Part shown: positions 35,138-60,400 of the stretch, one piece after another
How the letters are laid out: each line of letters begins with the position of its first letter
Position numbering within the stretch: the first letter of the stretch is position 1
IMG/VR virus record: IMGVR_UViG_3300025141_000020
Span: 1 to 64,000 of that record
Reading direction: 5' to 3' (one strand)
DNA: 64,000 nucleotides
Made by a program: the position numbers and the translations under genes
The notes under the pieces: generated by a model
What the model saw: the letters and a program-made list of their open reading frames with translations, nothing else
What the model was told of the DNA's origin: nothing
Database searches by the model: none

Positions 35138-36325
35138 TTAGAATTTCATTTTCAAAGTAAAGTTTGAGGGTGTGTTTTTTAGTTTTTTGATGGGTCTGTC
35201 TGTGTCAACTACTCCGATTAATTGATTTCTGTCATCGTACAAACCTATTTGTGTTATATATGTCGCTCCTACATCTGACATATTCCAAATATTATGTACC
35301 TCACCAAAAGGTGTTTTAAACTGCATTCCAGTATTTGTCCCCCCTGCTCCATAATAAGGGGCCTCTGCACTTGCCGCCGTTTGATTTTCTGTAACATAGA
35401 ACTCTCCTGAATCGGCAACAATATTTACCGTCAACACCCATTCTTTTTCAAAAGAGTAGTATTGACTCTGAGCTGATGTACTAGCTGTAAAATGTAAGTT
35501 AGTAAATCCTGATGAATCTCCCTCATAAAGAGTTGTGTTATCTTCAGTTCCACAACTATAACAAAAGTTGTTAACTAGGGTTGGGTGTGTTATAACCATG
35601 AATCCCATATCTAAATAACATATCCCTACTGGTATATCTTCAGATTGTGCGTAAGCTTTAGGTGTGTTAGAAGAAGAAACTGTATCTACAAATCTGAATG
35701 TGTCTGTAGCACCACCAGGATACCCTGTAGGTATAACCCCTGTCTGCCATCCTCCAGCCCAAGTAGCTGTGTTTACATTGGTTGCTGATAAGGTTGGTCC
35801 TGCTATTGTGTCTGAAAATAGAAATGCTCTATTAGTTGACGCTATACCTGGGTCACCTAATACATTCCCGTGTATCATTGGATTACCAAAATATGTAGCT
35901 TCTAATGAATTGTCAGAAGAAAATGCTTTAGGTTCATAATAAGAACTGTATAGTGTTTGTATTGTATAATCGTTACTTGTAATTGGGTTGTCCAGTGTAG
36001 GAAAATCAAATTTAATTGTTCTACCGTCTTGAAGTTCTCCGAATTGGCTGGAATCTATACTAACAACAATAATGTCTGATTGCATTAACCCACTAATACC
36101 ATTATTAATCCAAGTAGACGCAAAAGATTCTGTTTGTGCACAAGTTGTAGGTAAACTAAATGATGTGTATAGGTTAGAAAACGCTCTACCGTTTGTAGGA
36201 CTTCTTTGAGCTGCCGTAAATGTTAGTGAGGTCCCTGTAGCTGCTGCCCAACCATTATCTAGAAAAGGCACTAATTCAGTATTTATTAATTTTTGATTTG
36301 ATTCTATATTTTTTAATTTTCCCAT
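35138..36325 (-). CDS. Tail/baseplate structural protein
   Basis: C-terminus YITQIGLYDDRNQLIGVVDTDRPIKK resembles the tail-collar fibre (DUF3751-like) C-half; S/T/G-rich. Confidence 0.6.
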   Translation of the reverse strand: MGKLKNIESNQKLINTELVPFLDNGWAAATGTSLTFTAAQRSPTNGRAFSNLYTSFSLPTTCAQTESFASTWINNGISGLMQSDIIVVSIDSSQFGELQDGRTIKFDFPTLDNPITSNDYTIQTLYSSYYEPKAFSSDNSLEATYFGNPMIHGNVLGDPGIASTNRAFLFSDTIAGPTLSATNVNTATWAGGWQTGVIPTGYPGGATDTFRFVDTVSSSNTPKAYAQSEDIPVGICYLDMGFMVITHPTLVNNFCYSCGTEDNTTLYEGDSSGFTNLHFTASTSAQSQYYSFEKEWVLTVNIVADSGEFYVTENQTAASAEAPYYGAGGTNTGMQFKTPFGEVHNIWNMSDVGATYITQIGLYDDRNQLIGVVDTDRPIKKLKNTPSNFTLKMKF

Positions 36326-36326
36326 T

Positions 36327-36722
36327 TTACGTCCAAGTTTTAGTGTTATTATTTAAGCTTAATGATATTTTATTAGACCCTATGTTAAGTTTTAAAATAT
36401 GGTAAGGGCTTGCTTTTGTGTCTAATCTTTCATTACTAGAATTAGCTGGAAATACAGTAGTTTTGGTTATTTTTGAGTTTGCTGGGTAATCCACATAAAA
36501 AGTTTTTGCTTTCTCCGTAGAATTATTTAATGAAATATATTTTGACGCTGCATACGAAGCCCCATATTCTGCCGGCGTACCAAAAAACCTCAATCCACTT
36601 GTTGCTACTTTATCATGATATCTAATTCCACCACCCATCTTGATTGAATCGAAATATACTAGGCCATTATTTTCAGTACCAAGACTATTTGCTCTAAACC
36701 ATTTTAACGCTTCTATATTCAT
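36327..36722 (-). CDS. Hypothetical protein in the structural operon
   Basis: Tight tiling. Confidence 0.6.
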   Translation of the reverse strand: MNIEALKWFRANSLGTENNGLVYFDSIKMGGGIRYHDKVATSGLRFFGTPAEYGASYAASKYISLNNSTEKAKTFYVDYPANSKITKTTVFPANSSNERLDTKASPYHILKLNIGSNKISLSLNNNTKTWT

Positions 36723-36723
36723 T

Positions 36724-38619
36724 TTAATTTGCTTTTATTTCTTTCCCATTTATTAATTTACGGAATAATCTTTTACCTGTGCTTGTCTCATAAGAAGTTG
36801 TTCCACTAGTTGTGTATCCATACCCTCTCGGGTCTTCTGAGTAACTATCTTTGGTTTCTCCGTCTTCACCATAAAATCTAAATACAGCGTTATCATATAT
36901 ACTATAAAAATTCTGAGATGCCGCATTTTTATATGGTATAGATTCTAGTATAGCCCCTTTATTAAATATAAAATTAACTGTCACATTAAGTGGTGTGGTG
37001 TTGCCCTTTGCTTGGGCTGTTTCTAGTACCAAACTTATCGGTATAGAGACATTATAATTATCTATACTGTCACCACTTAACCCACTTTTATATCCTCCGC
37101 TATATTTGTTAGTACTCCAAAAACTATTAGATTGTGAGGATATACCTACAAACATATCGTCGGCCATTTTTAACATTCTACCTAATAATGTGTAGTGTGG
37201 GTCTGTCCCCGCTGCTACCCTACTGGGTGATGTTGGTTGTCCTCCTGCTTGTGATGGGAAAACATTAAATAGTGCACCAGAGGATTTAAATCCATTTTGT
37301 GTAGTATTCCAATTAGAACTATATTCCATTAAACCTATTACCCTACCATAAGCATCACTAGGATTTTCCGTGTCTGTTATTTTTATCCCTTTGGCTCCTG
37401 AGTTATTTATATTCAATAAATCACCATTTGCTTCTGTCATCATGAAAGGTGGTATGGGGTAATAGACTGGACTTAAACTAGAAGTAGCTACATCCAAAAC
37501 TAACCTTGCTGCTGGTAAGGTCGTGTCTATATTTTTATAACCATCGGAATCTAGAGCGTCTACTGATAGTGCTGCTTCCATATCTGTTGTAGTCACAAAA
37601 CCAACATATGTATCTCTTATATTTGTACTTTCTCCTGCCCAACCATTAATCTTATTATCCATAATAAATTTAGGGTAGACATTTCCAACTGTATTCCAAG
37701 GTACCATTCCACCAACATTTAAATACCCCCAATCAAAAGCTCCTAAACCAAGACTTGCTTCTCCAGCTCCCGCCTTATAAGCTCTTGTAGTGTTATTTAG
37801 ACTTGGTGAAAAGAATAGTGAAAATGGGGAAGCTTGTTTAAGTCCTTTAATTGTTGTTCCATTGTATTCTATACCTGTTTGTTGGCCATTAGCTCCATTC
37901 CTGATAAATGCTCCTCCAGCTACAACTAACGAATTATAATAATCATAGTCCTTCTTTAATACCATCTTTATGTTTTCTGGTTCTAGTGACGTTCCGTCAT
38001 AAACTTTTACAGAATCCCATATATTTCCATACATACCTAAACCATATTCTGATAGCTTTTGCAAAAATTGTGAATATTCACCTTTAGTGTCAATACCTAA
38101 CCCAGTTTCAAAATATGTGGTTGCTGAACCCACAATAGTAGATGAATTAATTGATAGTGTGTCCTTATAATCAGCTACATACCTAAAAGCAAATAATTTA
38201 TGTAAGACAAATAAATCATGTACATAATAATCTATAACACATGTATCTCTATAATATTTCATATTTCCATTAGGTTGTCTCATCCCTAAGGCTACATATT
38301 TTTTATCTGTTGCTTGAACTTGGGTCTTTTCTGGTTTTGCCCATACATTATCTCGGACTTTATAACCATCATTTACTGCGTTTCTGAATGTAGTTTTGTC
38401 ACCAGTAACATCAGGAAGGTAACCTAATTGTGCGGAGTCGTTGGATGTGGCGGATGTGTCAGAATGTGCTTGTGTATTTCTATAATCTATATCACTATCT
38501 GATATACCAAATTTAGTAAATAAGTTAATTACATTGCCCGCGTTAAGTACACGACTTCTACCCAAATCGGTCAGTTGTATATTTAATGTTGTTGTTGTTG
38601 CACTACTTATAAATCCCAT
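36724..38619 (-). CDS. Tail/baseplate structural protein
   Basis: N-terminus LTDLGRSRVL...FTKFGISDSDIDY shared with the two upstream paralogs. Confidence 0.6.
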   Translation of the reverse strand: MGFISSATTTTLNIQLTDLGRSRVLNAGNVINLFTKFGISDSDIDYRNTQAHSDTSATSNDSAQLGYLPDVTGDKTTFRNAVNDGYKVRDNVWAKPEKTQVQATDKKYVALGMRQPNGNMKYYRDTCVIDYYVHDLFVLHKLFAFRYVADYKDTLSINSSTIVGSATTYFETGLGIDTKGEYSQFLQKLSEYGLGMYGNIWDSVKVYDGTSLEPENIKMVLKKDYDYYNSLVVAGGAFIRNGANGQQTGIEYNGTTIKGLKQASPFSLFFSPSLNNTTRAYKAGAGEASLGLGAFDWGYLNVGGMVPWNTVGNVYPKFIMDNKINGWAGESTNIRDTYVGFVTTTDMEAALSVDALDSDGYKNIDTTLPAARLVLDVATSSLSPVYYPIPPFMMTEANGDLLNINNSGAKGIKITDTENPSDAYGRVIGLMEYSSNWNTTQNGFKSSGALFNVFPSQAGGQPTSPSRVAAGTDPHYTLLGRMLKMADDMFVGISSQSNSFWSTNKYSGGYKSGLSGDSIDNYNVSIPISLVLETAQAKGNTTPLNVTVNFIFNKGAILESIPYKNAASQNFYSIYDNAVFRFYGEDGETKDSYSEDPRGYGYTTSGTTSYETSTGKRLFRKLINGKEIKAN

Positions 38620-38671: not shown

Positions 38672-39451
38672 CTACATACATTTTGTACAACCCCCACTGC
38701 AAGTAGATTTTTCACCTAATTTATCACATAACATACAGTATATTTCATCATCTAAACAATAATCAAAATAGTTAGCTCCTGTAGATACCAAACATTTGTT
38801 AAGATATCCTAAATCTGCTATGTCAACTTTTCCGTCTCCATTAAAATCACCAATTAAGTCTTCCCCTTCTTCTGCAGTAGAACCTAGTAAATTAATTAAT
38901 AATTTAAAGTCTTCTTTATCTACAATTCCATTTCCATTAAAATCTGCACATGCGGTACAATACGTTGGGAAAAAATTTATTACTGATGACCCTACTGTCC
39001 AACAAGTATTAAACATACCTGTTGATGGTTCGTCTATACCATTTACTGTTTTTGATGGGTGGTAATTTGCCCATAATGTTGATTTAACCGGATTAGTTCC
39101 TATCCCTTGGTCATAAGTAATCACTCTATTGTCTTTAACCTCACAACTAGGGCCAACCATAACTGCTGATAGTGTGCCATAATTAACTTCGGTATCGGCC
39201 TGAACCCTACCTCTACTAGCTGGAATATCATAAAAACAACTAGTGGTTAGTGCACTTAAATCTACATCTGATACACAACTACCATCACCCACAAATCTAC
39301 GATAATCAATATCTGAATCTGATAATCCAAATTTTTTTATAGCGTCTACAAACCCACTGCCAGTAGTTAATAGTGTTTTACCGTAATCTGATAGATATAA
39401 TTTAAATGTATTACCAGAGAGTGTTACGTTATGTATGTTTAAATATGCCAT
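38672..39451 (-). CDS. Tail/baseplate protein with a dockerin-like paired Ca-binding domain
   Basis: N-terminus LSDYGKTLL...KFGLSDSDIDY; ADFNGNGIVDKEDFKLL and GDFNGDGKVDIADLGYL; Cys-rich tail. Confidence 0.7.
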   Translation of the reverse strand: MAYLNIHNVTLSGNTFKLYLSDYGKTLLTTGSGFVDAIKKFGLSDSDIDYRRFVGDGSCVSDVDLSALTTSCFYDIPASRGRVQADTEVNYGTLSAVMVGPSCEVKDNRVITYDQGIGTNPVKSTLWANYHPSKTVNGIDEPSTGMFNTCWTVGSSVINFFPTYCTACADFNGNGIVDKEDFKLLINLLGSTAEEGEDLIGDFNGDGKVDIADLGYLNKCLVSTGANYFDYCLDDEIYCMLCDKLGEKSTCSGGCTKCM

Positions 39452-39452
39452 T

Positions 39453-41849
39453 TTAAAAATCTATAGTTATAACAAATTGTTGTTGTCCATCTCTTTCTAC
39501 TGGTGATTGTAGTTTTGCTATCGCCATTAAATCTGGGAAACCGTTTTCATTATCATATAAACCTATTTCACTTATTTTAGGTTTTGTGCTATTTCCTGCA
39601 ATAGCGTTATAATTTACAAATGTCGGATTAACTGAGTTAGTAAATGACATAGTACCTGTGCCTAAAGAGACAACGTGTCTCATCTCATATATAGTTGCCA
39701 TAATATCCGTCTCTATTGTACCATAAAAGAAGTATTCGTCACCAAATTGTAATTGAGTTGCACCCAATGTGCTTGCAGGTGGTACTGATACAAAATCATT
39801 GTATGTATACCCAGTTGGTGTTGTTGGGTATGGACATGGTGCTCCTAGTGTGTCGTTACCTGTTAGATAAACTGTTGTACCAACTAAATTACTTGCTGAT
39901 ATAGCGGTTCCTACTACGTGGTTAGGTATGTCTGCTGTCATATCTAAATATTCCCACGCTCCTGGTAATGGGTCACCACCAGTTGTTATTTGAAATAGTA
40001 TGAGTAGTCTGTTTGCTTCAAATCCTAATCCTCCACTAGCTGATAAATCTTTTAAGTATGGAAACTCTTGACCGAAGGTTATGCCTACATCAAATAAAGT
40101 GTCGTTAGGTCCTAAAGTCTCATAAACATAGTAATTACAATGCATCCCCGTCATTCCCGCGGTATCGTCTGCTAACATATAAGTTATATAAACTCTATCG
40201 TACGTACTTTGAACTACTCCTTGTGTGCATCCAGACCCAGAACATCCAGTGCCCGCATCTATTTTACTTGTTCCTGGAGCGGGTAGTGTATAGCTTCTAT
40301 TAGATTTATATGACATGGCCGTTAATAACTCTTGGTCGTCTATAATTACAGTTTTATAATCTGGAAATACTTTACCTACAGTATTAGGTGTATTACCACT
40401 ACCAATATTATCATCAGTTAGAGGGTAATACCTAAGACCATCATCATTCATGTTTAGATTTTTATTGGATAGCATCACATTAGGCGTTGGGTTAAATGAG
40501 CTATTTATTGGTGGGTCAACATAAAATGTTTGCCCTAGTATTGTCTCGTCTCCCATACCTGTCCCTGTACCTGAACCAAAATTATCTTTTTTATGCCACA
40601 TTAACCAAGGCATATGTAATTTAAAGTTCCTTGCCGCTCCCATATTATTAATATTTCCAGCGAAATTATAAGCTTCTAAAGCAAATTTTTCGCCATAAAA
40701 ATCAGTAGTAGAGTTATTTGTGTAGTGTATAATCCCAATACATTTCTGTTGTTCTGGAAGTACAACTCTTGGTTTGTCCTGTGAATCATAGTACCATGTA
40801 CCACCAATTGTACCATGATATGCATCCACATCTTGTAAACTAAAACTTTGTCCATTGTTACTACCATAACCAAAATATTCTTTACTACCACAATAACCAC
40901 TTGAGCCATATTTATTAACGTCTTCGTATCCTGAAGTAATTCCAGCTACACTCTCAGACCAATTTATATTCATATTCCAAATTTTAGCGTCATTTGTTGA
41001 TACACTACAGCAATCGTTATAAGAGAGTGTGTCGTCACACCAATAAGATGTGGCATTTGCTATATTGTATATACTACCTACTGTGGTCATTGGATTACCG
41101 GAAACTGCTGGATATACTCTCATAGCTACACAATTAGATACAACCCCTTCAGAAGCATAGTCTGGCACATCCCTATCTAAAGTTAATACTATTGTACCTG
41201 TGGTAGCTGTGTAGTATGTTGCACTAACAACTTGATAAAATAGTGTTGGTCCAGCCGCTGAATAAACTAATTCTGAACAACCATTACCTGAAAATGTGTA
41301 AGATATAGATACTATATCACCTACTAGTGGGGCATAAACTTGTGAGCTACAAGCGCCTGATGTCAGAACAACTGTACTAGTTCCAGACATACCTGAAGAA
41401 CACACATTCCAGTTTGATGACAAGGTATAGTAACTATTTGTATTTGCACTAAAGTTGTGGTCTCCAGCTGTATTAATATAGGGCCCCAATGCTGGCACAC
41501 TAAAAAATCCTCTTGTGGTTGCACTATTATACACTTCTTCTATATTATGTTGTGGTATTGTTGGGCCAAATGTGTCTGTAGTATTAATTCCGCCATTTAA
41601 AGGGTATTTTATATGACCTTTATTTTTTGCTGGATAAGGATTCAAATTTTGTGCATTATGTTCAGCTTGTAGAATATTTAACTCTGCGTAAGCTATAGGT
41701 AGGGTATTATAACAATCATAACAAACTTCACTGTCTCCTAATTGGAATAATCCTATATTTAATTTACCTTCTGAAAGTTTTTTTCTTCCGGCATCTGTTA
41801 GTCTAGCTACAATTGCTCCTTGGGTACTGTTTTTAATTATATAACTCAT
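39453..41849 (-). CDS. Tail/baseplate structural protein
   Basis: N-terminal LTDAGRKKL..G...FQLGDSE and C-terminal ISEIGLYD...LMAIAKL.SPV; TATTTATA at 41865. Confidence 0.65.
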   Translation of the reverse strand: MSYIIKNSTQGAIVARLTDAGRKKLSEGKLNIGLFQLGDSEVCYDCYNTLPIAYAELNILQAEHNAQNLNPYPAKNKGHIKYPLNGGINTTDTFGPTIPQHNIEEVYNSATTRGFFSVPALGPYINTAGDHNFSANTNSYYTLSSNWNVCSSGMSGTSTVVLTSGACSSQVYAPLVGDIVSISYTFSGNGCSELVYSAAGPTLFYQVVSATYYTATTGTIVLTLDRDVPDYASEGVVSNCVAMRVYPAVSGNPMTTVGSIYNIANATSYWCDDTLSYNDCCSVSTNDAKIWNMNINWSESVAGITSGYEDVNKYGSSGYCGSKEYFGYGSNNGQSFSLQDVDAYHGTIGGTWYYDSQDKPRVVLPEQQKCIGIIHYTNNSTTDFYGEKFALEAYNFAGNINNMGAARNFKLHMPWLMWHKKDNFGSGTGTGMGDETILGQTFYVDPPINSSFNPTPNVMLSNKNLNMNDDGLRYYPLTDDNIGSGNTPNTVGKVFPDYKTVIIDDQELLTAMSYKSNRSYTLPAPGTSKIDAGTGCSGSGCTQGVVQSTYDRVYITYMLADDTAGMTGMHCNYYVYETLGPNDTLFDVGITFGQEFPYLKDLSASGGLGFEANRLLILFQITTGGDPLPGAWEYLDMTADIPNHVVGTAISASNLVGTTVYLTGNDTLGAPCPYPTTPTGYTYNDFVSVPPASTLGATQLQFGDEYFFYGTIETDIMATIYEMRHVVSLGTGTMSFTNSVNPTFVNYNAIAGNSTKPKISEIGLYDNENGFPDLMAIAKLQSPVERDGQQQFVITIDF

Positions 41850-45308: not shown

Positions 45309-48300
45309 TTATTCTTCTGGACATACATCATCACTAGATATACACTCGTTTATTGCTTTACAAAAATAAGTTCCATGAGGACATATACCACTCTCATCAC
45401 TATCAGTCTCAGTATCAGGGTTGTCTATCAGGTCATCTTTAATTGTTTGTGGTGTTAATGGATTTTCTATTTGGTCTACTCTTTGTTTTTCTTTTTCTGC
45501 GTCACTAATTACTTGTGTTGTGGACTTATCTCTTATTTCATCTTCAGTTTCCGTTATTACCTCTTGACAGTTTGCCTTACATTTTTCTATACTCTCATAA
45601 CGACCATTTCTGTCTTCAAAACATAACCCCTCAAAACAGTTCCACCTCTCAGTGCCGTTTCCGTTTCCAGAGCCTGACCCCCAACCTGAACCACACCAAT
45701 TATTCCATTCACCACATTTGATTGGTCCGTCTGGGTCACAACCTCCCGGTTCACACCTACATCCACACTGCCTTTGGGTACAAACCTTTTTACAGTCCTC
45801 TAGACTACTATATCTTCCTTGGTTAGTTTCTATACACTCACTTTTTGTGGGTGATGCTCCTATACCAATTTTTCCTCTATTGTCCCGATTTACGGGTAAT
45901 CTTTGTTGTACACAATCATACCCCCTTCTTCTACCTACACCACTACCATAACTACTACCATTAACTTGTTGGCACTCTTCCTCACATCTATCTAAAGTTT
46001 CAAATCTACCTCGTGGGTCTTCTATACAAACCGGTTCACTACTACCATTGCCATCAGATGTCCTCCTACCTCTATCTGTAGGAATATAACATGTATATCT
46101 ACATTCACCGTAGTCACATTCTGATTGTGGCTTTGGTGGTCCTCCTGGGTTTGTACCACCGTCGTCATCATCTATATTTGGTATTACACCTTTAGGTTTT
46201 ATAGGGGTTACACCACTCACAACCTCTTTTATTAGATTGCCGCTCTCAGCACAGTGATTTATAATTACCGGAGTACAACTTGCGTTTAATTTTTTACAAT
46301 ATTCATTTGCCCTTTTTATACAATCTATACAATCATCAGATTTAGTATCTGCCATTATTTCTGATATTCCGAATATTGGGTCTAATTTCAATTTATTAGC
46401 AACGTCTTGGTTACATTTGCAATAATACTGACAACTAGTAGATTCTGGTTTAACTATTATTGTTGGGTCTACAATCGTGATTACTTTACCGTCTATAGTT
46501 ATTTTTTTATCTACATTAACTACTTTCCATTTATCCGGTGTAGTTTTATGTAAAATGTCGTAGGAGGTTAACGCTTTTTCTGTTGAGCATGGTTTAAATA
46601 GTCCACATTCTGGTGTAATTACTATATAGTGTATTAAATCGTTGCCATATAAATCTTTAAATATATTTTTCACCACATATGAATGTCTTTGTTGTGGAAA
46701 TGTGTATAGACAAGTAGCGTCATAGTCTTGGTTGTATTGTGGCAAACATACTTTAAATATCCCATTTTTAGACATTTTTGTCATATAGTTGATTGTCCCT
46801 CCTTTAAGTGTATAGTCTTTTATAATATTGTTTTCTATTAGTGATTGCCATGCATTCATTGGTTTATTTCTTACTATATCCCATTTTAGTACATTATTAG
46901 TTCCTTTGCTGTCCACAAAAGTTAAATGGTTAAAAGTTGTCATATTAACTGTAGGCACCGTTAATGTATTACACCCATTATCGGTTATATAAAGTGACCC
47001 GTCTAACTTTACAGACCTACCGTTATTTCCTTTAACAATATCAAACCCTTGTGACATCTCCGTTGAGTCAAAAAATAATTGTTTTTCCCGTACACTATTT
47101 GCGGACTTAATTGCTCTAAAAAATGGTGCTTCTGAAATCGCCCCACTATCATCTAGTTTATGCCCTAAATTTACTGTTATAGTACTAGTGCCCCCAGTAC
47201 CAAATTTAGATGTTGTCTCACTAACACAAGTATACTTTAATTGTACTTTATCCCCTTTAATTAAATTTACAAACCCACTATCAACACTAACAGTACCATT
47301 ATGTTCAAATATTGTTGATGCTGATGTAGCACTCATATCACAAATTGTAAATGTACTAGATGTTTTATCTATATCCGTTACTTGTAACTTTAAATAATCA
47401 TTGGCTATACCATCATTATCGGTCCTTAAGACTTTATATTCAGCTAATGTACTTTCTGTACCAGCTGAAGAAGTTTTAACCAAAGATACCACAAAAGAGA
47501 ACCCTAATATCCCGTTAGCATTTTTACCTCTTTCTCCTGGGTAGTATTTGAAGTTGGTGTCCATTAGTGCTATATTAGTTTCTCCAACACCCGCATTTAT
47601 TAAAGAAGTGTTTATTAATCTTTTAATTTCATAGTTAGTGGAAGGATAGGTTCCAGTCATAGCGGAAGCATAAACAGTACTTAGATATTCACACCATTTA
47701 GTGTCTTTGTATCCCACGTTTAAGTGCCCTTTGTATGTTAACCTATACAGACCACTACTCTGAGCACTATATGTCATATAATCTGTCGAGGTTGTTTCAT
47801 TTATAATTAAACCGTCATTATATACATTATAAAAAGCGTAGGGCTTATAACTCTCTGTGTAGTCACCAATTAATGGAATAGGTTTGTTTAAATTAAAATC
47901 ACTTATAGGTACTACTGTGTCAGCCGAGATAGAGGCCCCACTAATAGTTATATCATAAGTATTAGTTATAGCTGATGTATGTGCGGAATATATCCCGCTA
48001 TATCTTCCGTAAGTTGTAAAACAAAAATCTGTATTACTATTCTGTTGTATTGGAGTGTCTTTATATAAAAATGTTAATTTTTTAATGTTTTCACTTTTAG
48101 GACTTCTTTCTGTATATGGGTGGCTCGCCTTGCCAATATGGTAGTAACCAATATACGGACTACCGTCTAATAATAATTCTTTTCCTGTGGTATATAATCC
48201 GTTTTGTCTACCAGATTTTATGGTCCCTATCCTTGTTTTTTTACGTGGACATATTAATATCTCTTTTATTAAACCATCACTATCATAAGTAAATCTAACA

Positions 48301-49472
48301 TCATTAAATTGATTTAATGTGGAACGTTTAATCCATTGTGATATATTAGAATATATCCTATTTACAGTTTTCGTTGACCCATTTTTATCCACTACATTAT
48401 AAGTTTCTTTACTACCTATTTGCTGTTTTTTTAATTTTTCTATAAAAGCTATTTGTTGTTGGGTGTTTGTAAATTTTAATGATATACATTTATTAACTGA
48501 TGAAAATATTTTATTATTTCTTATTTCACTTGTCCAATCAAGTGGGCTTATTTCTTTTCCGTTAAGTACAAGTGTTGGGGTTTCTGTTATTATCCCTTCA
48601 TTGACTTCTCTACTAACATTATATGGTATCTGAATCTTGTTAGTCGTACCCAAATTGAATTCACTTAAATTTGCGTTAACGTTAAATTCATTTTCAATAG
48701 CGTATACCTGACTTGACATTAATTCTATAGCGTCTGCTGGTATATTTTGTTTAGTTAGTTGTTTTTTATAGTCGTAGATTACCTCGCCAGTACCCATATT
48801 ACCATTATCTAGAGTTAGGTATGCTGTATTTAATTTCACCTTTTTTCTGGGCACTGTAACTTGTTTTGGTACACTTATATTTGGTGTAAACCCTTCTAAT
48901 ATAATATTGTCTGTAACATCACAATTAAAACTTAGTGATGTGGTATATTGGCCACAATTCTCACTTAGTATGTCCATGTCAAAAGAAAGTCTTGCTAGAT
49001 TGTTTTTACTTATATTAGGTAGTATCATTTGGATTGGGTGTACCCTTCTTGTCTTACTGCCTGTTGGCAATTTTAATGCCCCTATAACTATACCTGTACG
49101 AGTATTCTGTGTATTATAATAATTTATATGAGATAAAAATGCCCCATATTCTTTACCTCGTACGGAATTAAAAGAATATTTCCCATTATCCCCTTTAAAA
49201 ACTTCTAGAATAATATCAGAGTTATTAATACCTATATTGTCTAAATATTTTTTTAATTTTACCTGTTTACTGCTAAATCTTAAAAATAATCTTTTAAGGT
49301 TACTGTCTGTTTTAACAAAAATCTGAGCTGGTGATTGTGTGTTATATGTAAAACTAAAGCATTTTCTTTTTTTGTAGTTTTTATCCTTGATTCTTCCTGA
49401 AACATAGAATACGAATTTTAACTCATTACTGAGTACCCTAAAATCAACACTACTGTTATAAACTTTTGACAT
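45309..49472 (-). CDS. Large structural protein with C-terminal Cys-rich repeats
   Basis: 1387 aa; CIEDPRGRFETLDRCEEEC / CIETNQGRYSSLEDCKKVC / CFEDRNGRYESIEKCKANC. Confidence 0.65.
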   Translation of the reverse strand: MSKVYNSSVDFRVLSNELKFVFYVSGRIKDKNYKKRKCFSFTYNTQSPAQIFVKTDSNLKRLFLRFSSKQVKLKKYLDNIGINNSDIILEVFKGDNGKYSFNSVRGKEYGAFLSHINYYNTQNTRTGIVIGALKLPTGSKTRRVHPIQMILPNISKNNLARLSFDMDILSENCGQYTTSLSFNCDVTDNIILEGFTPNISVPKQVTVPRKKVKLNTAYLTLDNGNMGTGEVIYDYKKQLTKQNIPADAIELMSSQVYAIENEFNVNANLSEFNLGTTNKIQIPYNVSREVNEGIITETPTLVLNGKEISPLDWTSEIRNNKIFSSVNKCISLKFTNTQQQIAFIEKLKKQQIGSKETYNVVDKNGSTKTVNRIYSNISQWIKRSTLNQFNDVRFTYDSDGLIKEILICPRKKTRIGTIKSGRQNGLYTTGKELLLDGSPYIGYYHIGKASHPYTERSPKSENIKKLTFLYKDTPIQQNSNTDFCFTTYGRYSGIYSAHTSAITNTYDITISGASISADTVVPISDFNLNKPIPLIGDYTESYKPYAFYNVYNDGLIINETTSTDYMTYSAQSSGLYRLTYKGHLNVGYKDTKWCEYLSTVYASAMTGTYPSTNYEIKRLINTSLINAGVGETNIALMDTNFKYYPGERGKNANGILGFSFVVSLVKTSSAGTESTLAEYKVLRTDNDGIANDYLKLQVTDIDKTSSTFTICDMSATSASTIFEHNGTVSVDSGFVNLIKGDKVQLKYTCVSETTSKFGTGGTSTITVNLGHKLDDSGAISEAPFFRAIKSANSVREKQLFFDSTEMSQGFDIVKGNNGRSVKLDGSLYITDNGCNTLTVPTVNMTTFNHLTFVDSKGTNNVLKWDIVRNKPMNAWQSLIENNIIKDYTLKGGTINYMTKMSKNGIFKVCLPQYNQDYDATCLYTFPQQRHSYVVKNIFKDLYGNDLIHYIVITPECGLFKPCSTEKALTSYDILHKTTPDKWKVVNVDKKITIDGKVITIVDPTIIVKPESTSCQYYCKCNQDVANKLKLDPIFGISEIMADTKSDDCIDCIKRANEYCKKLNASCTPVIINHCAESGNLIKEVVSGVTPIKPKGVIPNIDDDDGGTNPGGPPKPQSECDYGECRYTCYIPTDRGRRTSDGNGSSEPVCIEDPRGRFETLDRCEEECQQVNGSSYGSGVGRRRGYDCVQQRLPVNRDNRGKIGIGASPTKSECIETNQGRYSSLEDCKKVCTQRQCGCRCEPGGCDPDGPIKCGEWNNWCGSGWGSGSGNGNGTERWNCFEGLCFEDRNGRYESIEKCKANCQEVITETEDEIRDKSTTQVISDAEKEKQRVDQIENPLTPQTIKDDLIDNPDTETDSDESGICPHGTYFCKAINECISSDDVCPEE

Positions 49473-54455: not shown

Positions 54456-57400
54456 CTATAGTAGTGTTAACGGAGTACCACAACTTTCACAACCCTCTTT
54501 AACACCACATGTAACCCATTGTCCTGTATGGTTATGAAATTGTACGGTTATAGTTCCTAATGTTCCTCCTGCTGCAGTAGTGTCATGTAGAACATTACCA
54601 TAACCATCATTTGCCCAACTAACGTGACCAGGAATAGGACTTCCATTTGGGTAAACCGCTGTAGTTGTAGCCTCCCAAAAACAATCTCCTAGAACACCAT
54701 TTTGAAATGGGTCTGGGTTACCTCCTGGGCCTCCAGCTACACAACATACACAACAGTCACCTGATAAAGTACCTGAGCCGTAATTGTAGAATCCACTTAA
54801 ACCTGGGTATGTAAAACATTCGTTTTCTTGGAAAGCATACTGTATGGTTGGGAAACTCCATTGGCTACCTCCTAAATATGAATGGGTAAGTGGTTGTCCT
54901 GGTGCTAGTAAACCTGCTGACATTAAATCTGGTTCACAGCATCCACAAATTGTGTGTTCACAACAGTTTTGGGTACAACCAGTATAATCACTTATTGGCC
55001 ATGCATCGTCCCACACATTAGATGGACCTCCAGTTGTTCCTGTCCCAGGAAGTATCCAACAATCACATGTTATGGGTCCTGTTGTACAATGACAAGGTCG
55101 AGCTCCACCCCATACCTCAGGACAACAACCTTGAGCACCTCTTGGAGATAATGTTGGGTCCCATATTTGACATGCAGGTCCTAAATTTGGTAATGGGCTC
55201 GGATTAAGGTATAAACCTGAATCGTTATATTTAGTAGCTGTCCCCAAAGGAAGTGTTGCTGCACAAGCAGCCCCGGTAATACTATCGGCATTACACTGAT
55301 TCACACAAGCATTAAAATTAGTGGGACTTACCCATTCACAAGCCAGATTCCTCATAATGGATTGTATTTCTACGAAATCTGTACATGTTGATACGTCGGT
55401 ATTGTATTCGGTCATCAATCCAGCAATAGTATCTCCCCAAGATGGGTACATAGCGAAGCCTAATCCCCAAGTCGTATGACAATGGTATGTACCCCCGTTT
55501 GGGTTTGGTGGATAGCCACTAGATGAGCTTGGTGGTGCGTTAGAATATGTGCTATAAAACAGATGGTCAGAAGAACACATGCCTCCGGTTCCCACTCCTG
55601 TTGGTGGTGGAATCGGGCAAGGAACAGTTTGTCCTGGTGACGATATTCCTACTGTATTGGTGTAAACACTTTGTATTGCAGGCTGGAAAGGTGGGGCAAC
55701 GTTAATATGCCAGTTGATGTAATCCGTGGGAGTACCAACAACACCACTATGGTTAGTATTACTACATTTTGATTGAGCCCACCAATATGGACTACTATTA
55801 CATAAGTAAGACTTACATAAGGCGTCACAGTCTACTTGATTCACAAAAACATCTGGGTCACTATAACTATACATCGCTTGAACACACCCACCAATATTTC
55901 CATCAATACATTTCCACGTTAGTGTTGGTGTACCTCCTGTACCACATGTAAAACATTTCTCATCAAGTCCAGTGGAATTAAGAAAGTGTTCAGTGTCACA
56001 TGGCACCCACCATGGCTTACCGGCACCTTGACCCTGCCAAGTTGTTACGTTAGGGCTAGGTCCCATTGTATAGAGATTTAACCCGTCTGCACTATTACCA
56101 GATAACCAATTACACCAATGTTCTGATGGTGAGTATTGGTCTGGTAACATATTTGCTAAATGTTGTCCTGCATCCCACATCTGAGTTCTAACCCAACAAC
56201 AGCCCGGGTGGAGTGGGTCTTTTACAATTTGTCCTTCTCCCCAATAAGGTTCTGTGCTTGACCACATTTGTACTGTTGTGTGGGGTATTACATTGGTTCC
56301 GTCCCAACCGTCAAATGTGTTTGGTACTGAGTTATCATATATCCCAAGACTACCATTCGATAATACAGTTGGATTCCAATAGCCAAGTAAACCAGCCTGA
56401 TGATGGTACCATGATTTTTGTCCCACACACTGGTCACATTCTCCTGGCTCTATAGGTTCACAATTATTTGTTAATGTCATGCAACTATAGAAACTATCAT
56501 AACAATCACGAGTACAAGTTGCACACCCCCAATCTAATTCACATGGTGTTGGTGCTGATGGAGGTGTACATGGTCCAACATTTATATCTAACCATCCACT
56601 ACATTTACAAGGGTTTAATACTGAATTTGGGTTAGATACTATGTATTGGCTACCCATTGGATTTTGACATATAATACAACATGGTACTGGTGGTCCAGAA
56701 GATACAGGAGCAGAACCTATAGTTCCTAGATTAATATCTACGGGATTAACATCTGGCCCTAATACTTTTTGATGTACTATTTGCTCTGATACGAATCCTT
56801 CTGTTGTTGGATAGATTGGTACTGGGCCGTCATTACACTTGCCCATACTTACTTGTGTGTCGATTCCATTACAATTACAAGGAGCTGCTCCCTGCACTAT
56901 ATAGTAAATAATACCTGTTCCACGAACCTCTGGTAGATGTTTACAACATATTTTACAATTTCCTGAACTACTCCCACCGTCTGGGCATTCTACCATTGGT
57001 CCCGTGCCATCTAAAGACGTACAATACATTCGGCATGGTAAATTTTGGGGGTTTGGGTAGCTAAGTGTCGTACCTGCTACACAACCACCTTGGCCATCAT
57101 CTTCACAACAACAACAATCCTGTGGACAACTAATCTGACTAATTCCCGCACAAACTGAGTTACATGGTAGTCCTGTTGGGTTGAATTGCGTCGTTTGTGT
57201 ACCGTTAACACAGTTTCCAAATCCATCGTCCTCACAACAACAACATGGAGTTCCTTGGGTGGTGGGTTCACAACAGTATTTACACCATTCCTGACACTTT
57301 TCTAAACTAGAGAAAGGTGTACCACCACCATTATAACTCACTTGTGAACCAGGAGCTCCAGCGTCAGTACCCCAAACATTATCCCCATAAGATGCATTAG

Positions 57401-60400
57401 CTGTTATTTCAGTGTTTATATATGGGTATTCTTCTATACAATTTGTTATCTGATATGGGTATTGTGGGTTATTATCGTCACACCACCATCTTTCTTCATA
57501 CACTACAGGAGGACACTCTGGGTCACATGGAATCCACATTAAATCAGTACCGTACGCTGGTAGTCCTGAAGTATTTAAGGCGTTCATATATAGATTATAA
57601 TAATCAGAAGGTAACATTGTTGTATCATACAGTGCCCAATCCCCTGTACCTAAAACCATCACATAACAACAACCATCTTGAGTCACAACATCACCATTTA
57701 TGTATGTTCCTCCATTAGCTGTTGGTGTTGGTGTCCATGACAAAGGTGTACTATTAAAGCTGGTCAAGGTAATACTATAAGTTAGTAGAACACCAGCACT
57801 ACCCTCGTAATGGTATGTTATGGTATTATCTAAACATTTCTCACACTCACAACATCTTTGATTATTGTTTGTTGCTGCATGACAGCACGCTAAGGTGTAA
57901 CATGGTGGTAATTGTACTGGATTAGTTGGTGCGGCTGTGAACTCACATTGGCACACACCATTACATTCAAATTGACATACCAGTTGGCAGTCAGCTTGTG
58001 CAGTAGGACCTACATATGGCCCAGACATTAAGGTGTTAATTACTGGGTAAACTATACATCCCAGTATATCATCACAATAATAATCTAGGTATATTTCTAC
58101 ACAAGGCTCCTCGGTAATGATACAATCAATTAGTGTTGCATAACAATCTGCTGCCATACAGTTGCAGTTTTGATTCATAGCACAATACCAGTTTAAATAA
58201 CAAGTTCCTGGGGATGAGGTTACTGAGTCACAGTCACAACAAAATCTACAAGCTTCTTGACAAGCTCCTAGTGAAGTAAAATAAGCCATATTGTTTACAG
58301 CTCTAGTTACAGCTCCAACACCAAATAAATTTGTATCTAATAGTGTGCTAATATTACTCACACAACCACCCAAACTAGCACTGTAATCATAGTGACACCA
58401 GTACTCTGTTGGTGGTAATGAACAGTCACAAGGTGTTGTTGTTGTTGTTGCTAAGAAACAACCTAAAGCGTCCCAGAAAAAAGTACCAGCACAGTTAGAT
58501 ACATTTCCGACAAAAGTACATACAGACACACCATTAGGGTCGCAGCACCAAGTACACTCTGGTTGACAGTCCCCTAATGACGTAAAGTTTGTAGTTAGTG
58601 GGTTTTGGTACAGTGCGTCACCATCATTTACTTCTACACACCCAGTACCATCTACATTTACCACCGCATTAGGTGAACAATCAGAACTATCGTCACAATA
58701 CCATTGTGGCGGTAATGGTCCGGGACAACAGTTTGGTAATAACGCATTTACTGGATTTATACCCATACATTCATTGTAGGAATTGTATGCGTAAACATTT
58801 GGTGGACAATCCGTTGGGATTGGACCAGATGCTAGAATTAATTCTTGTTGGTAAGTTGCACACATTGGTATGCAAGGATTTGTTCCTGGTATACAAAAAC
58901 ATTGTGCGTCACACTCATCACCACTACCATTATCACAAGTTGAGTTATTATAACAATTAAAAATATGTCCTGTTCCCATAGTAGTGTCACACGCACTTGG
59001 TACACATCCGTCTGGTGAACATTCCCAACTTGGTGTATAGGCCGGGTCACAAACATCACATGGGTCATAAGTTGCTGCTTGCCATATAAATGGTACTGGT
59101 GGGTCTCCTGGCGTTAGATTACAACTTACCCAACAGTTTGGTACTGAACCAGCTGGTGGGTCTCCTGGTGTAAAATGATTACAATCATATGTTGTTGGGT
59201 CTCCTGGTGTAGGTGGGGTTTGTGGTAATATAATAGGGCAATCACATCTAAAACAACAAAAATCGGTATCAGTATCACCCCAATAAACAGCATCATCTTC
59301 ATCGTAAAACTGGAATAAACTATTCCAGGCTCCAGTTGAATTTACTGGTTCCGGGCCACATGCACAATCACATGTTTCATCTGTTGGGTCACAACATGTT
59401 GGAGTAGTAGCTGGTGCTACTGGTGGGCATAAAGCGTTAGTACAATCAAACATAAAACACCACGGATATGCGGGGTTAAATACATACCCAGATGATGTTG
59501 GGTCATTACATGGGGTAGTTGATATGTTGTAAGCCTGGTCGTATGAACAAGGCCAATCTAATATTGGTGATGGTGGCCCATTTGGGTACCAAATCATATT
59601 GAATCCTGATGTTAAGTCATCATCACAGTCCGCATAACAACATCCTTGATTTGCATAACAACAAGCTGAAAAAGTGTCATATCCGGTCCATAATGGGTCT
59701 GGGTCGGTAACCTGCCAATTATTTTGAGCTATAATTGTTTGACTAATCCCTTGTTTACAACCAATTAAAACCGGTGGTATAGTTGGTGTCGTTGTTGTAC
59801 CTGTTTCTGTAAAGCAGTCCCAACCAAAATCACAAATACAAGCTGCTAGACAAGATGGTTGGTCAGGATAAGATGGGATTCCGTTTAATCCTCCTGTTGG
59901 GTCTGGACCATATGTGTTAGGACTTGTAGATATTAGTGTAGGACACATGTTTGGGTAGGAACTAGTACATGGAGTCATGGCATTACAATCACATGTCCAA
60001 CATTCTATATTTACTGTACAAGCTGTAACACAGTCTGCCTCGGTTAAGTATGGACCAGTACCGGTTGGTGGTCCACCTAATGTATACCATGGTATACATG
60101 GACTCTGGTATGGTCCTGGTGTAGGTGGGTTATATACAATATATGGGTCATCACACCACCAACTACAAGGTACATCTCCAACTACATTTGACACACCAAA
60201 ATATATTAACATATTTGATTCACAGTCACTTTGTGAAGGCCACAAGGTGGCGTTTGGGTCCATTGAACCAATAACTAGTGGTCCTGGTGTCGGTATACCA
60301 CCCAAAGACTGGCATCCACTTTCACAATCCCAAGTCCAGACTGTATCAATACAACATCCTGCTATAGGGCCAATAGGTGCTAGATTAACTGGTGGTATAA

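What the first reader, a model, noticed from the sequence alone, without database searches (positions are those of the whole stretch)
38790..38948. Dockerin-like module in a phage tail protein
Seen: two DxNxxGxVDxxD loop-helix units about 32 aa apart, the dockerin type I pattern, flanked by Cys clusters. Established: dockerins bind cohesins in cellulosomes, although non-cellulosomal dockerins exist. Inference: a Ca-dependent docking hub for accessory fibres/enzymes, or a binder of host surface cohesin-like domains.
Basis: partly seen in the sequence, partly recalled or inferred. Interest (0 to 1): 0.65.

Follow-up and report, generated by a model that had tools for sequence, protein, structure and literature searches.

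The report
Dockerin head on phage tail-block protein
A small, conserved protein encoded among the tail and baseplate genes of an uncultured marine jumbo phage ends in a genuine calcium-binding dockerin module framed by invariant cysteines, but no cohesin partner was found, so what it docks to is still open.

Summary
Window 38790-38948 lies on the minus strand inside a 259-aa ORF (38672-39451). It encodes two 12-residue Ca loops (D170-D181, D202-D213), exactly 32 aa apart and flanked by cysteines.

Pfam Dockerin_1 scores 38.6 bits (cut-off 22.9). All EF-hand and FG-GAP models fall below their cut-offs. The confident C-terminal half of an AF2 model matches dockerins first in an unbiased PDB scan (2ozn_B, Z 6.4, rmsd 1.7 Å over 56 aa), with no EF-hand pair in the top 50.

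The gene is a strictly syntenic core gene of a marine myovirus lineage of roughly 290 kb. It sits in a co-directional array that begins at a gp6-like baseplate wedge gene.

Its N-terminal 55-100 aa is homologous to the N-termini of both flanking proteins (798 and 631 aa). That module occurs in at least 1,086 representative clusters, and the ten representatives scanned match no Pfam or PHROG family.

Ca ligands and 12 cysteines are conserved. The classical cohesin-contact positions 10/11 are hypervariable, and sister lineages keep only the second repeat. No Pfam cohesin was found in this genome or in four relatives.

Best reading: a tail appendage with a Ca- and cystine-locked dockerin knob. 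Canonical cohesin docking is unproven.

The parts
38672..39451 (-). Gene for the 259-aa dockerin-bearing protein (P0001), stop codon included
   Evidence: ORF list and translation. There are 48 relatives at 42-87% identity, nearly all 224-282 aa, from marine metagenomes. The position is syntenic in all 23 related loci.
39152..39451 (-). N-terminal domain (aa 1-100). The first ~56 aa form a module shared with both flanking proteins.
   Evidence: hhalign, dock259 against p631: aa 1-56 at prob 98.3%, E 1.7e-14; aa 1-102 against p631 1-97 at prob 97%, E 4.8e-11. p631 against p798: prob 93.7%, E 1.8e-7. dock259 against p798 is weak: E 6e-4, prob 28%. A profile of the module finds 1,086 representative proteins at E<=1e-3, almost always at the extreme N-terminus.
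39005..39151 (-). Variable middle region (aa 101-149)
   Evidence: Mean pairwise p-distance is 0.60, the highest of any segment or protein compared in the block. Column entropy is high. The AF2 model is unconfident here.
38675..39004 (-). C-terminal head (aa 150-259): a dockerin embedded in a cysteine framework
   Evidence: In the AF2 model, pLDDT by 10-residue block runs 71-92 from residue 151 on. Invariant or near-invariant C150, C165, C168, C220, C232, C239, C242, C251, C255 and C258.
38783..38950 (-). Dockerin module proper (aa 168-223)
   Evidence: Pfam PF00404 at 38.6 bits against a cut-off of 22.9. VIA-align: 2ozn_B Z 6.4, rmsd 1.7 Å over 56 aa. Dockerins hold ranks 1-6 of 48,161 chains.
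38909..38944 (-). Ca-binding loop 1 (D170-D181)
   Evidence: Ligand positions 1, 3, 5, 9 and 12 are conserved (D170 100%, N172 94%, D174 91%, D178 89%, D181 100%). Positions 10/11 show 8-9 residue types.
38813..38848 (-). Ca-binding loop 2 (D202-D213)
   Evidence: D202, G205, G207, V209 and D213 are invariant in the family. Positions 10/11 show 12 residue types each. This loop is also kept in the sister-lineage orthologues.
38675..38782 (-). Cysteine-rich C-terminal tail (aa 224-259; C232, C239, C242, C251, C255, C258)
   Evidence: Conservation in alignment A1. C242 and C255 are lost together in the one outlier, P0048, which suggests a disulfide pair.
39453..41849 (-). Upstream neighbour p798 (798 aa, 15 Cys). 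It carries the same N-terminal module. Its stop codon is 1 nt from the dockerin gene's ATG.
   Evidence: Sequence TAA-A-ATG. N-module homology. It is the best conserved protein of the block (p-distance 0.33). No family or PDB match.
36724..38619 (-). Downstream neighbour p631 (631 aa). It shares the N-terminal ~100 aa with the dockerin protein.
   Evidence: No family or PDB match.
35138..36722 (-). p131 and p395, the last two genes of the structural array before RuvC and primase
   Evidence: Synteny. The p395 C-terminus gives the only, sub-threshold, PF12571 (P2 gpH-type tail fibre N-domain) match in the genome: E 0.018, 12.3 bits. hhalign against P2 gpH 83-109: E 9.5e-5, prob 59%.

Best explanation
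P0001 is most likely a small accessory protein of the tail or baseplate periphery of an uncultured marine myovirus of roughly 290 kb. It has three parts: an N-terminal module of about 55-100 aa, a fast-evolving middle region, and a C-terminal head of about 110 aa.

Shown:
- The head contains a bona fide two-repeat dockerin with intact Ca ligands.
- The N-terminal module is shared with the two flanking gene products.
- The gene lies in the baseplate and fibre gene array.

Inferred:
- The shared N-terminal module fixes the protein to the same tail sub-assembly as its two neighbours.
- The C-terminal dockerin is a compact knob that reaches its rigid form only outside the cell. Calcium, which is abundant in seawater, loads the two loops, and the 12 conserved cysteines oxidise.
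- Invariant C168 (just before loop 1) and C220 (end of the last helix) may form a covalent version of the 'intramolecular clasp' that stabilises ordinary dockerins.
- The knob then offers the helix 1 / helix 3 face, whose exposed positions vary freely between phage variants, as a binding surface.

The partner is unknown. I give about equal weight to a host-envelope ligand (about 0.2-0.25), a divergent socket in one of the phage's own giant tail proteins (about 0.2), and no specific partner at all, that is a purely structural Ca/cystine-stabilised cap (about 0.2-0.25).
For: Dockerin identity:
- Pfam PF00404 scores above its gathering score, while all five EF-hand models and both FG-GAP models fall below theirs.
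- Asp, not Glu, sits at loop position 12 in both repeats, and no helix precedes loop 2.
- Dockerins take ranks 1-6 of 48,161 PDB chains. The best is Z 6.4, rmsd 1.7 Å over 56 aa at 30% identity. No calmodulin or troponin appears in the top 50.

Selection:
- Ca ligand positions and 12 cysteines are invariant or nearly so across 35 aligned relatives at 44-87% identity.

Tail context:
- Tail sheath (phrog_23, 8e-52), baseplate hub (phrog_150) and gp6-like baseplate wedge (phrog_6, 2e-21) lie upstream on the same strand.
- From the wedge gene to p395 there are 14 co-directional genes with gaps of mostly 0-70 nt.
- The block evolves about twice as fast as the adjacent replication genes.
- Gene order is identical in all 23 related loci.

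Anchor:
- The N-module is homologous in three consecutive genes.
- It is found at the N-terminus of at least 1,086 representative proteins.
- The dockerin gene starts 1 nt after the p798 stop codon.

Clasp idea:
- Residues just before loop 1 and at the C-terminal end form a stabilising clasp in known dockerins (PMC3821032).
- C168 and C220 are invariant even in the sister lineages.
- C242 and C255 are lost together in P0048.
Against: - There is no direct evidence that the protein is in the virion. All its immediate neighbours lack any family, PHROG or PDB match.
- Cysteine pairing is inferred only. CxxC pairs (C165/C168, C239/C242) could instead bind zinc.
- The N-terminal half of the model is unreliable (pLDDT below 50).
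- A homotrimer prediction gave no answer, so the oligomeric state is unknown.
- Hypervariable surface positions fit a variable partner equally as well as no partner.
Confidence: 0.45

Rival explanations
1. Phage-internal docking hub. The dockerin plugs, Ca-dependently, into a cohesin-like beta-sandwich socket in one of the phage's own tail proteins. Candidates are the translationally coupled p798, p631, p131 or the giant Cys-rich proteins. The plug would assemble or decorate the tail.
For: - Characterised dockerins act as protein-protein assembly plugs, and the partner is encoded in the same genome in characterised systems (established knowledge of cellulosomes and of C. perfringens NagH/NagJ, the best structural match).
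- The gene pairs tightly with p798 (1-nt spacer).
- Synteny of the block is invariant.
- p131 is of cohesin size, and its nearest protein-language-model neighbours are viral ConA-like beta-sandwich proteins, though only as a lead at scores 0.83-0.88.
Against: - No Pfam cohesin match exists in the 210-kb genome; the first-look scan found no candidates at all. None exists in four relatives' fragments at E<=1.
- The canonical contact positions 10/11 are hypervariable, while p798 is the most conserved protein of the block.
- Sister-lineage orthologues keep only repeat 2.
- The distance-matrix comparison singles out no neighbour.
- The genome is only 66% complete and sequence searches miss divergent folds, so absence is weak evidence.
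Confidence: 0.2
2. Host-surface binder. The knob is a receptor-binding or primary-adhesion device. It docks on a host envelope protein, possibly the socket that normally holds the host's own dockerin-bearing surface proteins.
For: - The head is C-terminal, which is usually the distal, receptor-facing end in fibre-like tail proteins (general phage knowledge).
- The middle region is the fastest-evolving segment of the block, and the exposed dockerin positions are hypervariable.
- Two bacterial MAGs retrieved as the closest cellular dockerin matches, a Flavobacteriales bacterium and an Aeoliella sp., carry dockerin-bearing proteins (5 and 138 matches).
Against: - The host is unknown.
- Those same two genomes have no cohesin above the Pfam cut-off.
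- The larger and more divergent p1137 and p1387 (p-distance 0.51) are better candidates for the main receptor-binding proteins.
- Loss of repeat 1 in sister lineages argues against a conserved canonical dockerin-cohesin interface.
Confidence: 0.2
3. Not a virion protein. It would be a Ca-binding or Zn/Cys-rich protein acting inside the infected cell or released at lysis, and it merely sits next to tail genes.
For: Replication genes are interleaved with tail genes in this genome: SSB, UvsX, DnaB and RNR lie between the hub and the wedge, and RuvC and primase follow p395 directly. Position alone is therefore imperfect evidence. A second, unrelated phage dockerin protein (L030) lies between an S-adenosylmethionine decarboxylase gene and a RuvC gene.
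Against: - Dockerin loops need roughly micromolar or higher free Ca and would be mostly unloaded in the cytoplasm (established knowledge of Ca-induced dockerin folding; PMC3821032).
- Twelve conserved cysteines fit an extracellular protein.
- The N-terminal module is shared with two large neighbours inside a 14-gene array that starts at the baseplate wedge.
Confidence: 0.08
4. Only an EF-hand pair, or isolated FG-GAP-like Ca loops, with no dockerin fold.
For: A family profile matches troponin C and dockerin chains of the PDB at similar E-values (2.9e-5 against 4.8e-5). EF-hand and FG-GAP Pfam models give sub-threshold hits.
Against: - All EF-hand and FG-GAP scores are below their cut-offs, while Dockerin_1 is 16 bits above its own.
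- The troponin alignment needs inserted residues to span the 32-aa spacing.
- Loop position 12 is Asp in both repeats.
- Troponin and calmodulin superpose at rmsd of about 10 Å or more, against 1.7-2.5 Å for dockerins.
Confidence: 0.03

Closest known systems
Type I dockerin modules of cellulosomal enzymes (Pfam PF00404; e.g. Clostridium cellulolyticum 2vn5_B, C. thermocellum 2ccl_B)
   Same: Two tandem loop-helix (F-hand) repeats with Ca ligands at loop positions 1, 3, 5, 9 and 12, and Asp at 12. There is internal two-fold symmetry (VDxxDL...F in both repeats) and about 30% identity. The superposition gives rmsd 2.5-3.0 Å over 51-55 aa.
   Different: The protein is not secreted by a cellulolytic bacterium but encoded in a phage tail-gene array. 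The module is embedded between invariant cysteines and followed by a 36-aa Cys-rich tail, instead of forming a free C-terminal module. No cohesin is detectable in the genome.
Non-cellulosomal dockerin of Clostridium perfringens NagH, bound to the NagJ cohesin (PDB 2ozn)
   Same: It is the best structural match: Z 6.4, rmsd 1.7 Å over 56 aa, 30% identity. It shows that dockerins work outside cellulosomes as tight protein-protein plugs.
   Different: The NagH partner cohesin is known. Here none is found.
EF-hand pairs (troponin C, calmodulin)
   Same: DxNxDG-type 12-residue Ca loops. A profile of the family hits troponin C at E 2.9e-5.
   Different: No entering helix precedes the loops. The spacing is 32 aa, not about 36. 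Loop position 12 is Asp, not Glu. All Pfam EF-hand models are below their cut-offs, and the folds do not superpose.
Intramolecular clasp of dockerins (Slutzki et al. 2013, PMC3821032)
   Same: In known dockerins, residues at -1 to -3 before loop 1 contact the C-terminal end and stabilise the Ca-bound fold. Here invariant C168 sits at that place and invariant C220 at the end of the last helix.
   Different: Known clasps are non-covalent (aromatic stacking or salt bridges). A disulfide clasp is my inference and was not shown.
Conserved N-terminal anchor domains shared by paralogous tail fibres or tailspikes, and the P2 gpH-type fibre N-domain (PF12571)
   Same: Three consecutive tail-block proteins share one N-terminal module and have unrelated C-terminal parts. 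That multi-spike phages attach paralogous receptor-binding proteins in this way is my own knowledge. The p395 C-terminus weakly resembles the P2 gpH N-domain.
   Different: The module matches no Pfam or PHROG family. Its similarity to the P2 gpH N-terminus was tested and not supported. The same three genes recur in all related loci read, rather than varying in copy number.
Other virus-encoded dockerin modules (BFVD entries A0A516MFS6, and A0A8S5M688 'Dockerin type 1 [Myoviridae sp.]'; the 349-aa protein of locus L030)
   Same: The same small fold or module occurs in metagenomic phage proteins: rmsd 1.6 Å over 52 columns at 38% identity for A0A516MFS6, and hhalign prob 97% for L030.
   Different: These share only the dockerin. 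They lack the N-terminal module and the cysteine frame, and the neighbours are unrelated. None has been studied: no paper in the library describes a natural dockerin of a phage tail protein.

Membership tests
Dockerin (Pfam PF00404, type I-like) | Sequence scores above the curated family threshold | tested here: met
   38.6 bits, E 1.2e-09, against a gathering score of 22.9. Residues 170-219 cover model positions 3-54 of 57. Six-frame genome scan: 35.6 bits summed over the frame.
Dockerin (Pfam PF00404, type I-like) | Two tandem ~22-residue repeats, each a 12-residue Ca loop followed by a helix, with no entering helix (F-hand) | tested here: met
   Loops at 170-181 and 202-213. Helices at 179-188 and 211-223 in the model. 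Residues 189-210 are non-helical.
Dockerin (Pfam PF00404, type I-like) | Ca-ligand residues at loop positions 1, 3, 5, 9 and 12, with Asp at 12 | tested here: met
   D170/N172/N174(D in 91%)/D178/D181 and D202/N204/D206/D210/D213. These are conserved across 35 relatives.
Dockerin (Pfam PF00404, type I-like) | Three-dimensional dockerin fold | tested here: met
   Predicted model only (pLDDT by 10-residue block 71-92 over residues 151-259). Dockerins take ranks 1-6 of 48,161 chains, best Z 6.4 at rmsd 1.7 Å over 56 aa, and 17 of 17 rows in the second look. Z is modest because the domain is small.
Dockerin (Pfam PF00404, type I-like) | Ca2+ binding and Ca2+-induced folding | not testable with these tools
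   Needs ITC, CD or DSF of the recombinant head with and without Ca2+/EGTA.
Dockerin (Pfam PF00404, type I-like) | Binds a cohesin module | tested here: inconclusive
   No PF00963 match in the genome (66% complete) or in four relatives' fragments. The AF2 model of the cohesin-sized neighbour p131 failed at pLDDT 35. Two cellular genomes with 5 and 138 dockerin matches also lack a cohesin above the cut-off, so absence by sequence says little.
EF-hand pair (PF00036, PF13405, PF13499, PF13202, PF13833) | Score above the family thresholds; helix-loop-helix with Glu at loop position 12 | tested here: not met
   11.6-19.7 bits against cut-offs of 25-30. Asp at position 12 and no entering helix. Troponin and calmodulin superpose at rmsd of about 10 Å or more.
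FG-GAP repeat (PF01839, PF13517) | Score above the family thresholds | tested here: not met
   15.3 and 16.9 bits against cut-offs of 22.1 and 26.9. Only about 12 residues of loop 2 are matched.
Phage tail / baseplate structural protein | Homology to a known tail protein family, or presence in virions | tested here: inconclusive
   No PHROG, Pfam, NCBIfam or PDB-sequence match beyond the dockerin. Support is positional: a co-directional array from the gp6-like wedge (phrog_6, 2e-21) with sheath and hub upstream, a shared N-module with the neighbours, and a weak PF12571 match in p395.
P2 gpH-type tail fibre N-terminal domain (PF12571), considered for the shared N-module | Profile similarity of the N-module to the P2 gpH N-terminus | tested here: not met
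   hhalign of P2 gpH 1-60 against the three N-module alignments: prob 0.1-1.6%. Only the p395 C-terminal IGLYD stretch resembles gpH 83-109.

The most novel reading that the evidence does not exclude
The dockerin head is a working plug of a cohesin-dockerin-type system in a virus. There are two possibilities. Virions of this widespread marine jumbo-phage group may assemble or decorate their tails by a Ca-dependent plug-and-socket whose socket is too divergent to see by sequence. Alternatively, the phage may mimic host dockerin-bearing surface proteins and dock onto the host's own surface sockets as its receptor.
Probability: 0.2. Interest if true: 0.8.

Novelty: new variant of a known kind. 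Interest (0 to 1): 0.5.

Why it matters
Dockerins are textbook plugs of bacterial cellulosomes, and their non-cellulosomal roles are poorly understood. Here a canonical, selectively maintained dockerin sits in a core, syntenic gene of an abundant uncultured marine phage lineage. It is framed by invariant cysteines, and the protein carries an uncharacterised N-terminal module found in more than a thousand protein clusters.

If the knob binds a defined partner, this would be the first natural cohesin-dockerin-like interaction in virion assembly or host recognition. It would also give a compact module that should be stable in seawater and switchable by Ca, of interest for protein engineering.

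Even on the conservative reading, the work defines a three-gene tail module (p798, dockerin protein, p631) that current phage annotation resources miss.

Tried and rejected
1. EF-hand or FG-GAP reading: rejected.
2. Annotation of the neighbours. Pfam and PHROG scans covered p395 through p2883. NCBIfam covered p798, p631, p131 and p395. PDB sequence or profile searches covered p798, p631 and p395. The only results were a weak Ig_J hit in p1137, a weak CBM_5_12 hit in p2883 and a weak DUF7644 hit in p131.
3. tblastn of the whole protein, of p798 and of a 10-kb DNA stretch against 50,697 deposited phage records: no match. The dockerin module alone gave two borderline hits at E 0.2-0.5.
4. Cohesin HMM in the phage genome and four relatives: none.
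5. AF2 model of the cohesin-sized neighbour p131, using a 24-sequence alignment: pLDDT 35, unusable.
6. Complex prediction of three copies of the protein: 'no answer', score 0.00. This is not evidence either way.
7. Similarity of the shared N-module to the P2 gpH N-terminus, a lead from memory: not supported. Only a short C-terminal motif of p395 resembles gpH.
8. Distance-matrix (mirror-tree) comparison of the head with each neighbour, controlling for replication genes: all partial correlations were 0.67-0.81, so it does not discriminate.
9. Search of 185,579 species' genomes for the family: only generic dockerins were found.
10. Ten N-module-bearing representatives scanned in Pfam and PHROGs: no family.
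11. Reads tools and alternative genetic codes were not used.
Full report
**What is there.**
The flagged stretch is coding on the minus strand, inside ORF 38672..39451, which gives a 259-aa protein, P0001. Residues 170-181 (DFNGNGIVDKED) and 202-213 (DFNGDGKVDIAD) are two 12-residue Ca-type loops whose first Asp residues are 32 residues apart. C165 and C168 precede them, and C220, C232, C239, C242, C251, C255 and C258 follow.

A relaxed loop pattern occurs exactly twice in all six frames of the whole 210,568-base genome, both times here, and never in 100 shuffles of the window.

**Dockerin or EF-hand.**
- Pfam Dockerin_1 scores 38.6 bits (E 1.2e-09) against a gathering score of 22.9. Five EF-hand models (11.6-19.7 bits against 25-30) and two FG-GAP models fall below their cut-offs.
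- A family profile run against PDB sequences hits troponin C and dockerins at similar E-values, so sequence alone is not decisive.
- The troponin alignment needs inserted residues to bridge the spacing. Loop position 12 is Asp in both repeats, the dockerin habit rather than the EF-hand Glu. The model has no helix entering loop 2.
- An AF2 model built on 35 relatives is confident only in the C-terminal part: pLDDT by 10-residue block is 71-92 from residue 151 on.
- In Foldseek, dockerins lead (2y3n_B, 2ozn_B, rmsd 1.9 Å), whereas troponin and calmodulin superpose at rmsd of about 10 Å or more.
- The VIA second look gives 17 of 17 rows as dockerins. The best is the C. perfringens NagH dockerin, 2ozn_B: Z 6.4, rmsd 1.7 Å over 56 aa, 30% identity.
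- In an unbiased alignment against 48,161 chains, dockerins occupy ranks 1-6 and no EF-hand pair appears in the top 50.

This is a dockerin module by family score, residue pattern and predicted fold.

**The family and what selection preserves.**
A word-based search of 5.8 billion proteins finds 48 clusters at 42-87% identity. Nearly all are 224-282 aa, from marine metagenomes including Tara, and none is named.

- Twelve cysteines (59, 72, 150, 165, 168, 220, 232, 239, 242, 251, 255, 258) and the Ca-ligand positions of both loops are invariant or nearly so.
- Positions 10 and 11 of each repeat show 8-12 residue types. I recall these as classical cohesin-contact positions; that is my own knowledge and was not checked in a paper here.
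- One outlier, P0048, has lost C242 and C255 together, the signature of a disulfide pair.
- Known dockerins are stabilised by a non-covalent clasp between residues just before loop 1 and the C-terminal end (PMC3821032). Invariant C168 and C220 sit in just those places, so I infer, but have not shown, a covalent clasp.
- No cellular genome among 185,579 species encodes the full-length family. Only generic dockerins of a Flavobacteriales MAG and an Aeoliella MAG match.

**Genomic context.**
The window is the first 64 kb of an IMG/VR virus record of 210,568 bases, estimated to be 66% complete. Relatives occur on contigs of 286-294 kb.

Recognisable genes on the same strand, in order:
- tail sheath (phrog_23, 8e-52);
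- baseplate hub (phrog_150);
- a 2,019-aa protein with an endolysin-like end;
- a replication island (SSB, UvsX, exonuclease, DnaB, RNR);
- a gp6-like baseplate wedge protein (phrog_6, 2e-21).

From the wedge gene onward, 14 co-directional, tightly spaced genes follow. Their products are 1172, 591, 298, 2883, 306, 1254, 1387, 1137, 798, 259 (the dockerin protein), 631, 131 and 395 aa. RuvC, primase, exonuclease and SbcCD come next.

The order 1387-1137-798-259-631-131-395-RuvC-primase is identical in all 23 related loci. The dockerin gene's ATG lies one base after the stop codon of p798. The block evolves about twice as fast as the replication genes: mean p-distance is 0.33-0.51 against 0.18-0.21. 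The middle region of the dockerin protein is the fastest segment of all, at 0.60.

'Tail protein' is thus supported by position and evolutionary behaviour, not by homology or virion data.

**A shared N-terminal module.**
The first ~56 residues of the dockerin protein are homologous to the N-terminus of p631 (hhalign prob 98.3%, E 1.7e-14). The similarity extends to about residue 100 (prob 97%, E 4.8e-11). The p631 N-terminus matches that of p798 (prob 93.7%, E 1.8e-7).

A profile of the three N-termini, run against 1.84 billion representatives, finds 1,086 proteins at E<=1e-3. The match is almost always at residues 1-50, and the lengths cluster near those of the three paralogues. Ten of them have no Pfam or PHROG match.

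In a more distant relative (locus L038), a 331-aa protein occupies the dockerin gene's position between an 880-aa and a 709-aa protein. It aligns with the family over residues 8-222 (prob 98.9%), but it keeps only the second Ca loop. Three further 306-344-aa relatives do the same. Across this wider set, C59, C72, C150, C168, C220, C258 and loop 2 stay invariant.

The canonical two-repeat dockerin is therefore a feature of the window's clade. The conserved core is one Ca loop, its helix and a cysteine frame.

**Partner search.**
- The Pfam cohesin model finds nothing in the genome, with no candidates even at the first look, and nothing in four relatives' fragments.
- Two bacterial genomes with 5 and 138 dockerin matches also lack a cohesin above the cut-off. 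A dockerin without a recognisable cohesin is therefore common and uninformative.
- p131 is of cohesin size, and its protein-language-model neighbours are viral ConA-like beta-sandwich proteins at lead-level scores. Its AF2 model failed.
- A three-copy complex prediction gave no answer.
- Distance-matrix comparison singles out no neighbour.

**Interpretation.**
Shown: a real, selectively maintained dockerin module; its place in a conserved tail-gene array; and an N-terminal module shared with both neighbours.

Inferred:
- The N-module fixes the protein to the same tail sub-assembly as p798 and p631.
- The C-terminal head is a knob that becomes rigid only outside the cell, once Ca, which is abundant in seawater, loads the loops and the cysteines oxidise.
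- The knob presents a variable helix 1 / helix 3 face for binding.

Whether the partner is a host envelope component, a divergent socket in a phage protein, or nothing specific cannot be decided. Loss of repeat 1 in sister lineages and the lack of any cohesin lower, but do not exclude, the canonical docking readings.

**Prior knowledge.**
Full-text searches found no study of a natural dockerin in a phage tail protein. The few mentions concern a structural similarity to a dockerin-linked carbohydrate-binding module in an E. coli phage protein (PMC5967307) and dockerin domains on a putative archaeal virus contig (PMC13452462).

Deposited phage genomes hold no relative. BFVD does contain a few metagenomic viral proteins with the same small fold, one auto-named 'Dockerin type 1 [Myoviridae sp.]'. 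Locus L030 carries an unrelated phage protein with a C-terminal dockerin.

A phage-encoded dockerin is therefore rare but not unprecedented in databases. This cysteine-framed form, in a core tail-block gene with its own N-terminal module, is a new variant and is unstudied.

Noticed in passing
window 39284-39451, 38452-38619 and 41682-41849 (minus strand; N-termini of the 259-, 631- and 798-aa proteins): Three consecutive genes share an N-terminal module of about 55 aa, with the motif L(T/S)DxG(R/K)xxL...F.(L/I)SDSDIDYR. A profile of it finds 1,086 representative protein clusters, nearly always at the extreme N-terminus. Ten representatives tested have no Pfam or PHROG family. It looks like an undescribed tail-protein anchor module of a large uncultured phage group.
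   Followed up: partly
window 54456-63107 (minus strand): A 2,883-aa protein has 228 cysteines (8%), many prolines and recurring short motifs of the type (F/Y)x(S/T)xxxCxxxC. Its only family hint is a weak CBM_5_12 hit (E 0.003). The 1,387-aa protein at 45309-49472 has 46 cysteines. Together they form a strikingly Cys-rich tail-gene block.
   Followed up: no
window 35147-35278 (p395 C-terminus) and 39456-39575 (p798 C-terminus): Both proteins end in an I(S/T)(E/Q)IGLYD... stretch. In p395 it gives the genome's only, sub-threshold, match to PF12571 (P2 gpH-type tail fibre N-domain) and aligns with P2 gpH residues 83-109 (hhalign E 9.5e-5, prob 59%). For p798 the same comparison is weaker (E 0.13).
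   Followed up: partly
L030:9179-10228 (IMGVR_UViG_3300025646_000158): An unrelated viral contig from the IMG/VR collection encodes a 349-aa protein with a C-terminal dockerin (Pfam 29.4 bits; NCBIfam GC-type dockerin 27.1, just under its cut-off of 29). It lies between an S-adenosylmethionine decarboxylase gene and a 690-aa unknown protein followed by RuvC. Only the dockerin is shared with the window's protein.
   Followed up: partly
L038:8001-8996 (ENA ERZ26051151 ctg167725) and proteins P0106, P0127, P0133, P0152: Proteins of 306-344 aa from more distant relatives keep the N-module, six core cysteines and the second Ca loop, often with a Cys at loop position 10. The first dockerin repeat is replaced by variable inserts. 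For P0105 (L038) the position between 880-aa and 709-aa proteins matches that of the dockerin gene; the other four were not placed on contigs.
   Followed up: partly
genome G000 71864-79030 (beyond the window; loci L006, L007): A replication and nucleotide-metabolism island (RNR, DnaB, exonuclease, UvsX, SSB) interrupts the tail genes between the baseplate hub with the 2,019-aa protein and the gp6-like wedge gene. Functional modules are therefore interleaved in this genome.
   Followed up: no
window 16174-17199 (minus strand): A 341-aa protein matches phrog_14336 (E 3e-74). Its best tblastn matches among deposited phages are two uncultured phage records of 635 and 642 kb (LR745206, LR756502) at 33-35% identity. 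Prevotella Lak megaphages also match at 29% identity, and one Acinetobacter phage record annotates the homologue as DnaJ. This hints at distant kinship of the lineage.
   Followed up: no
protein P0048 (family outlier, 282 aa): This member has lost C242 and C255 together (to Tyr and Lys) and carries a 24-aa C-terminal extension. The joint loss suggests that these two cysteines form a disulfide.
   Followed up: no
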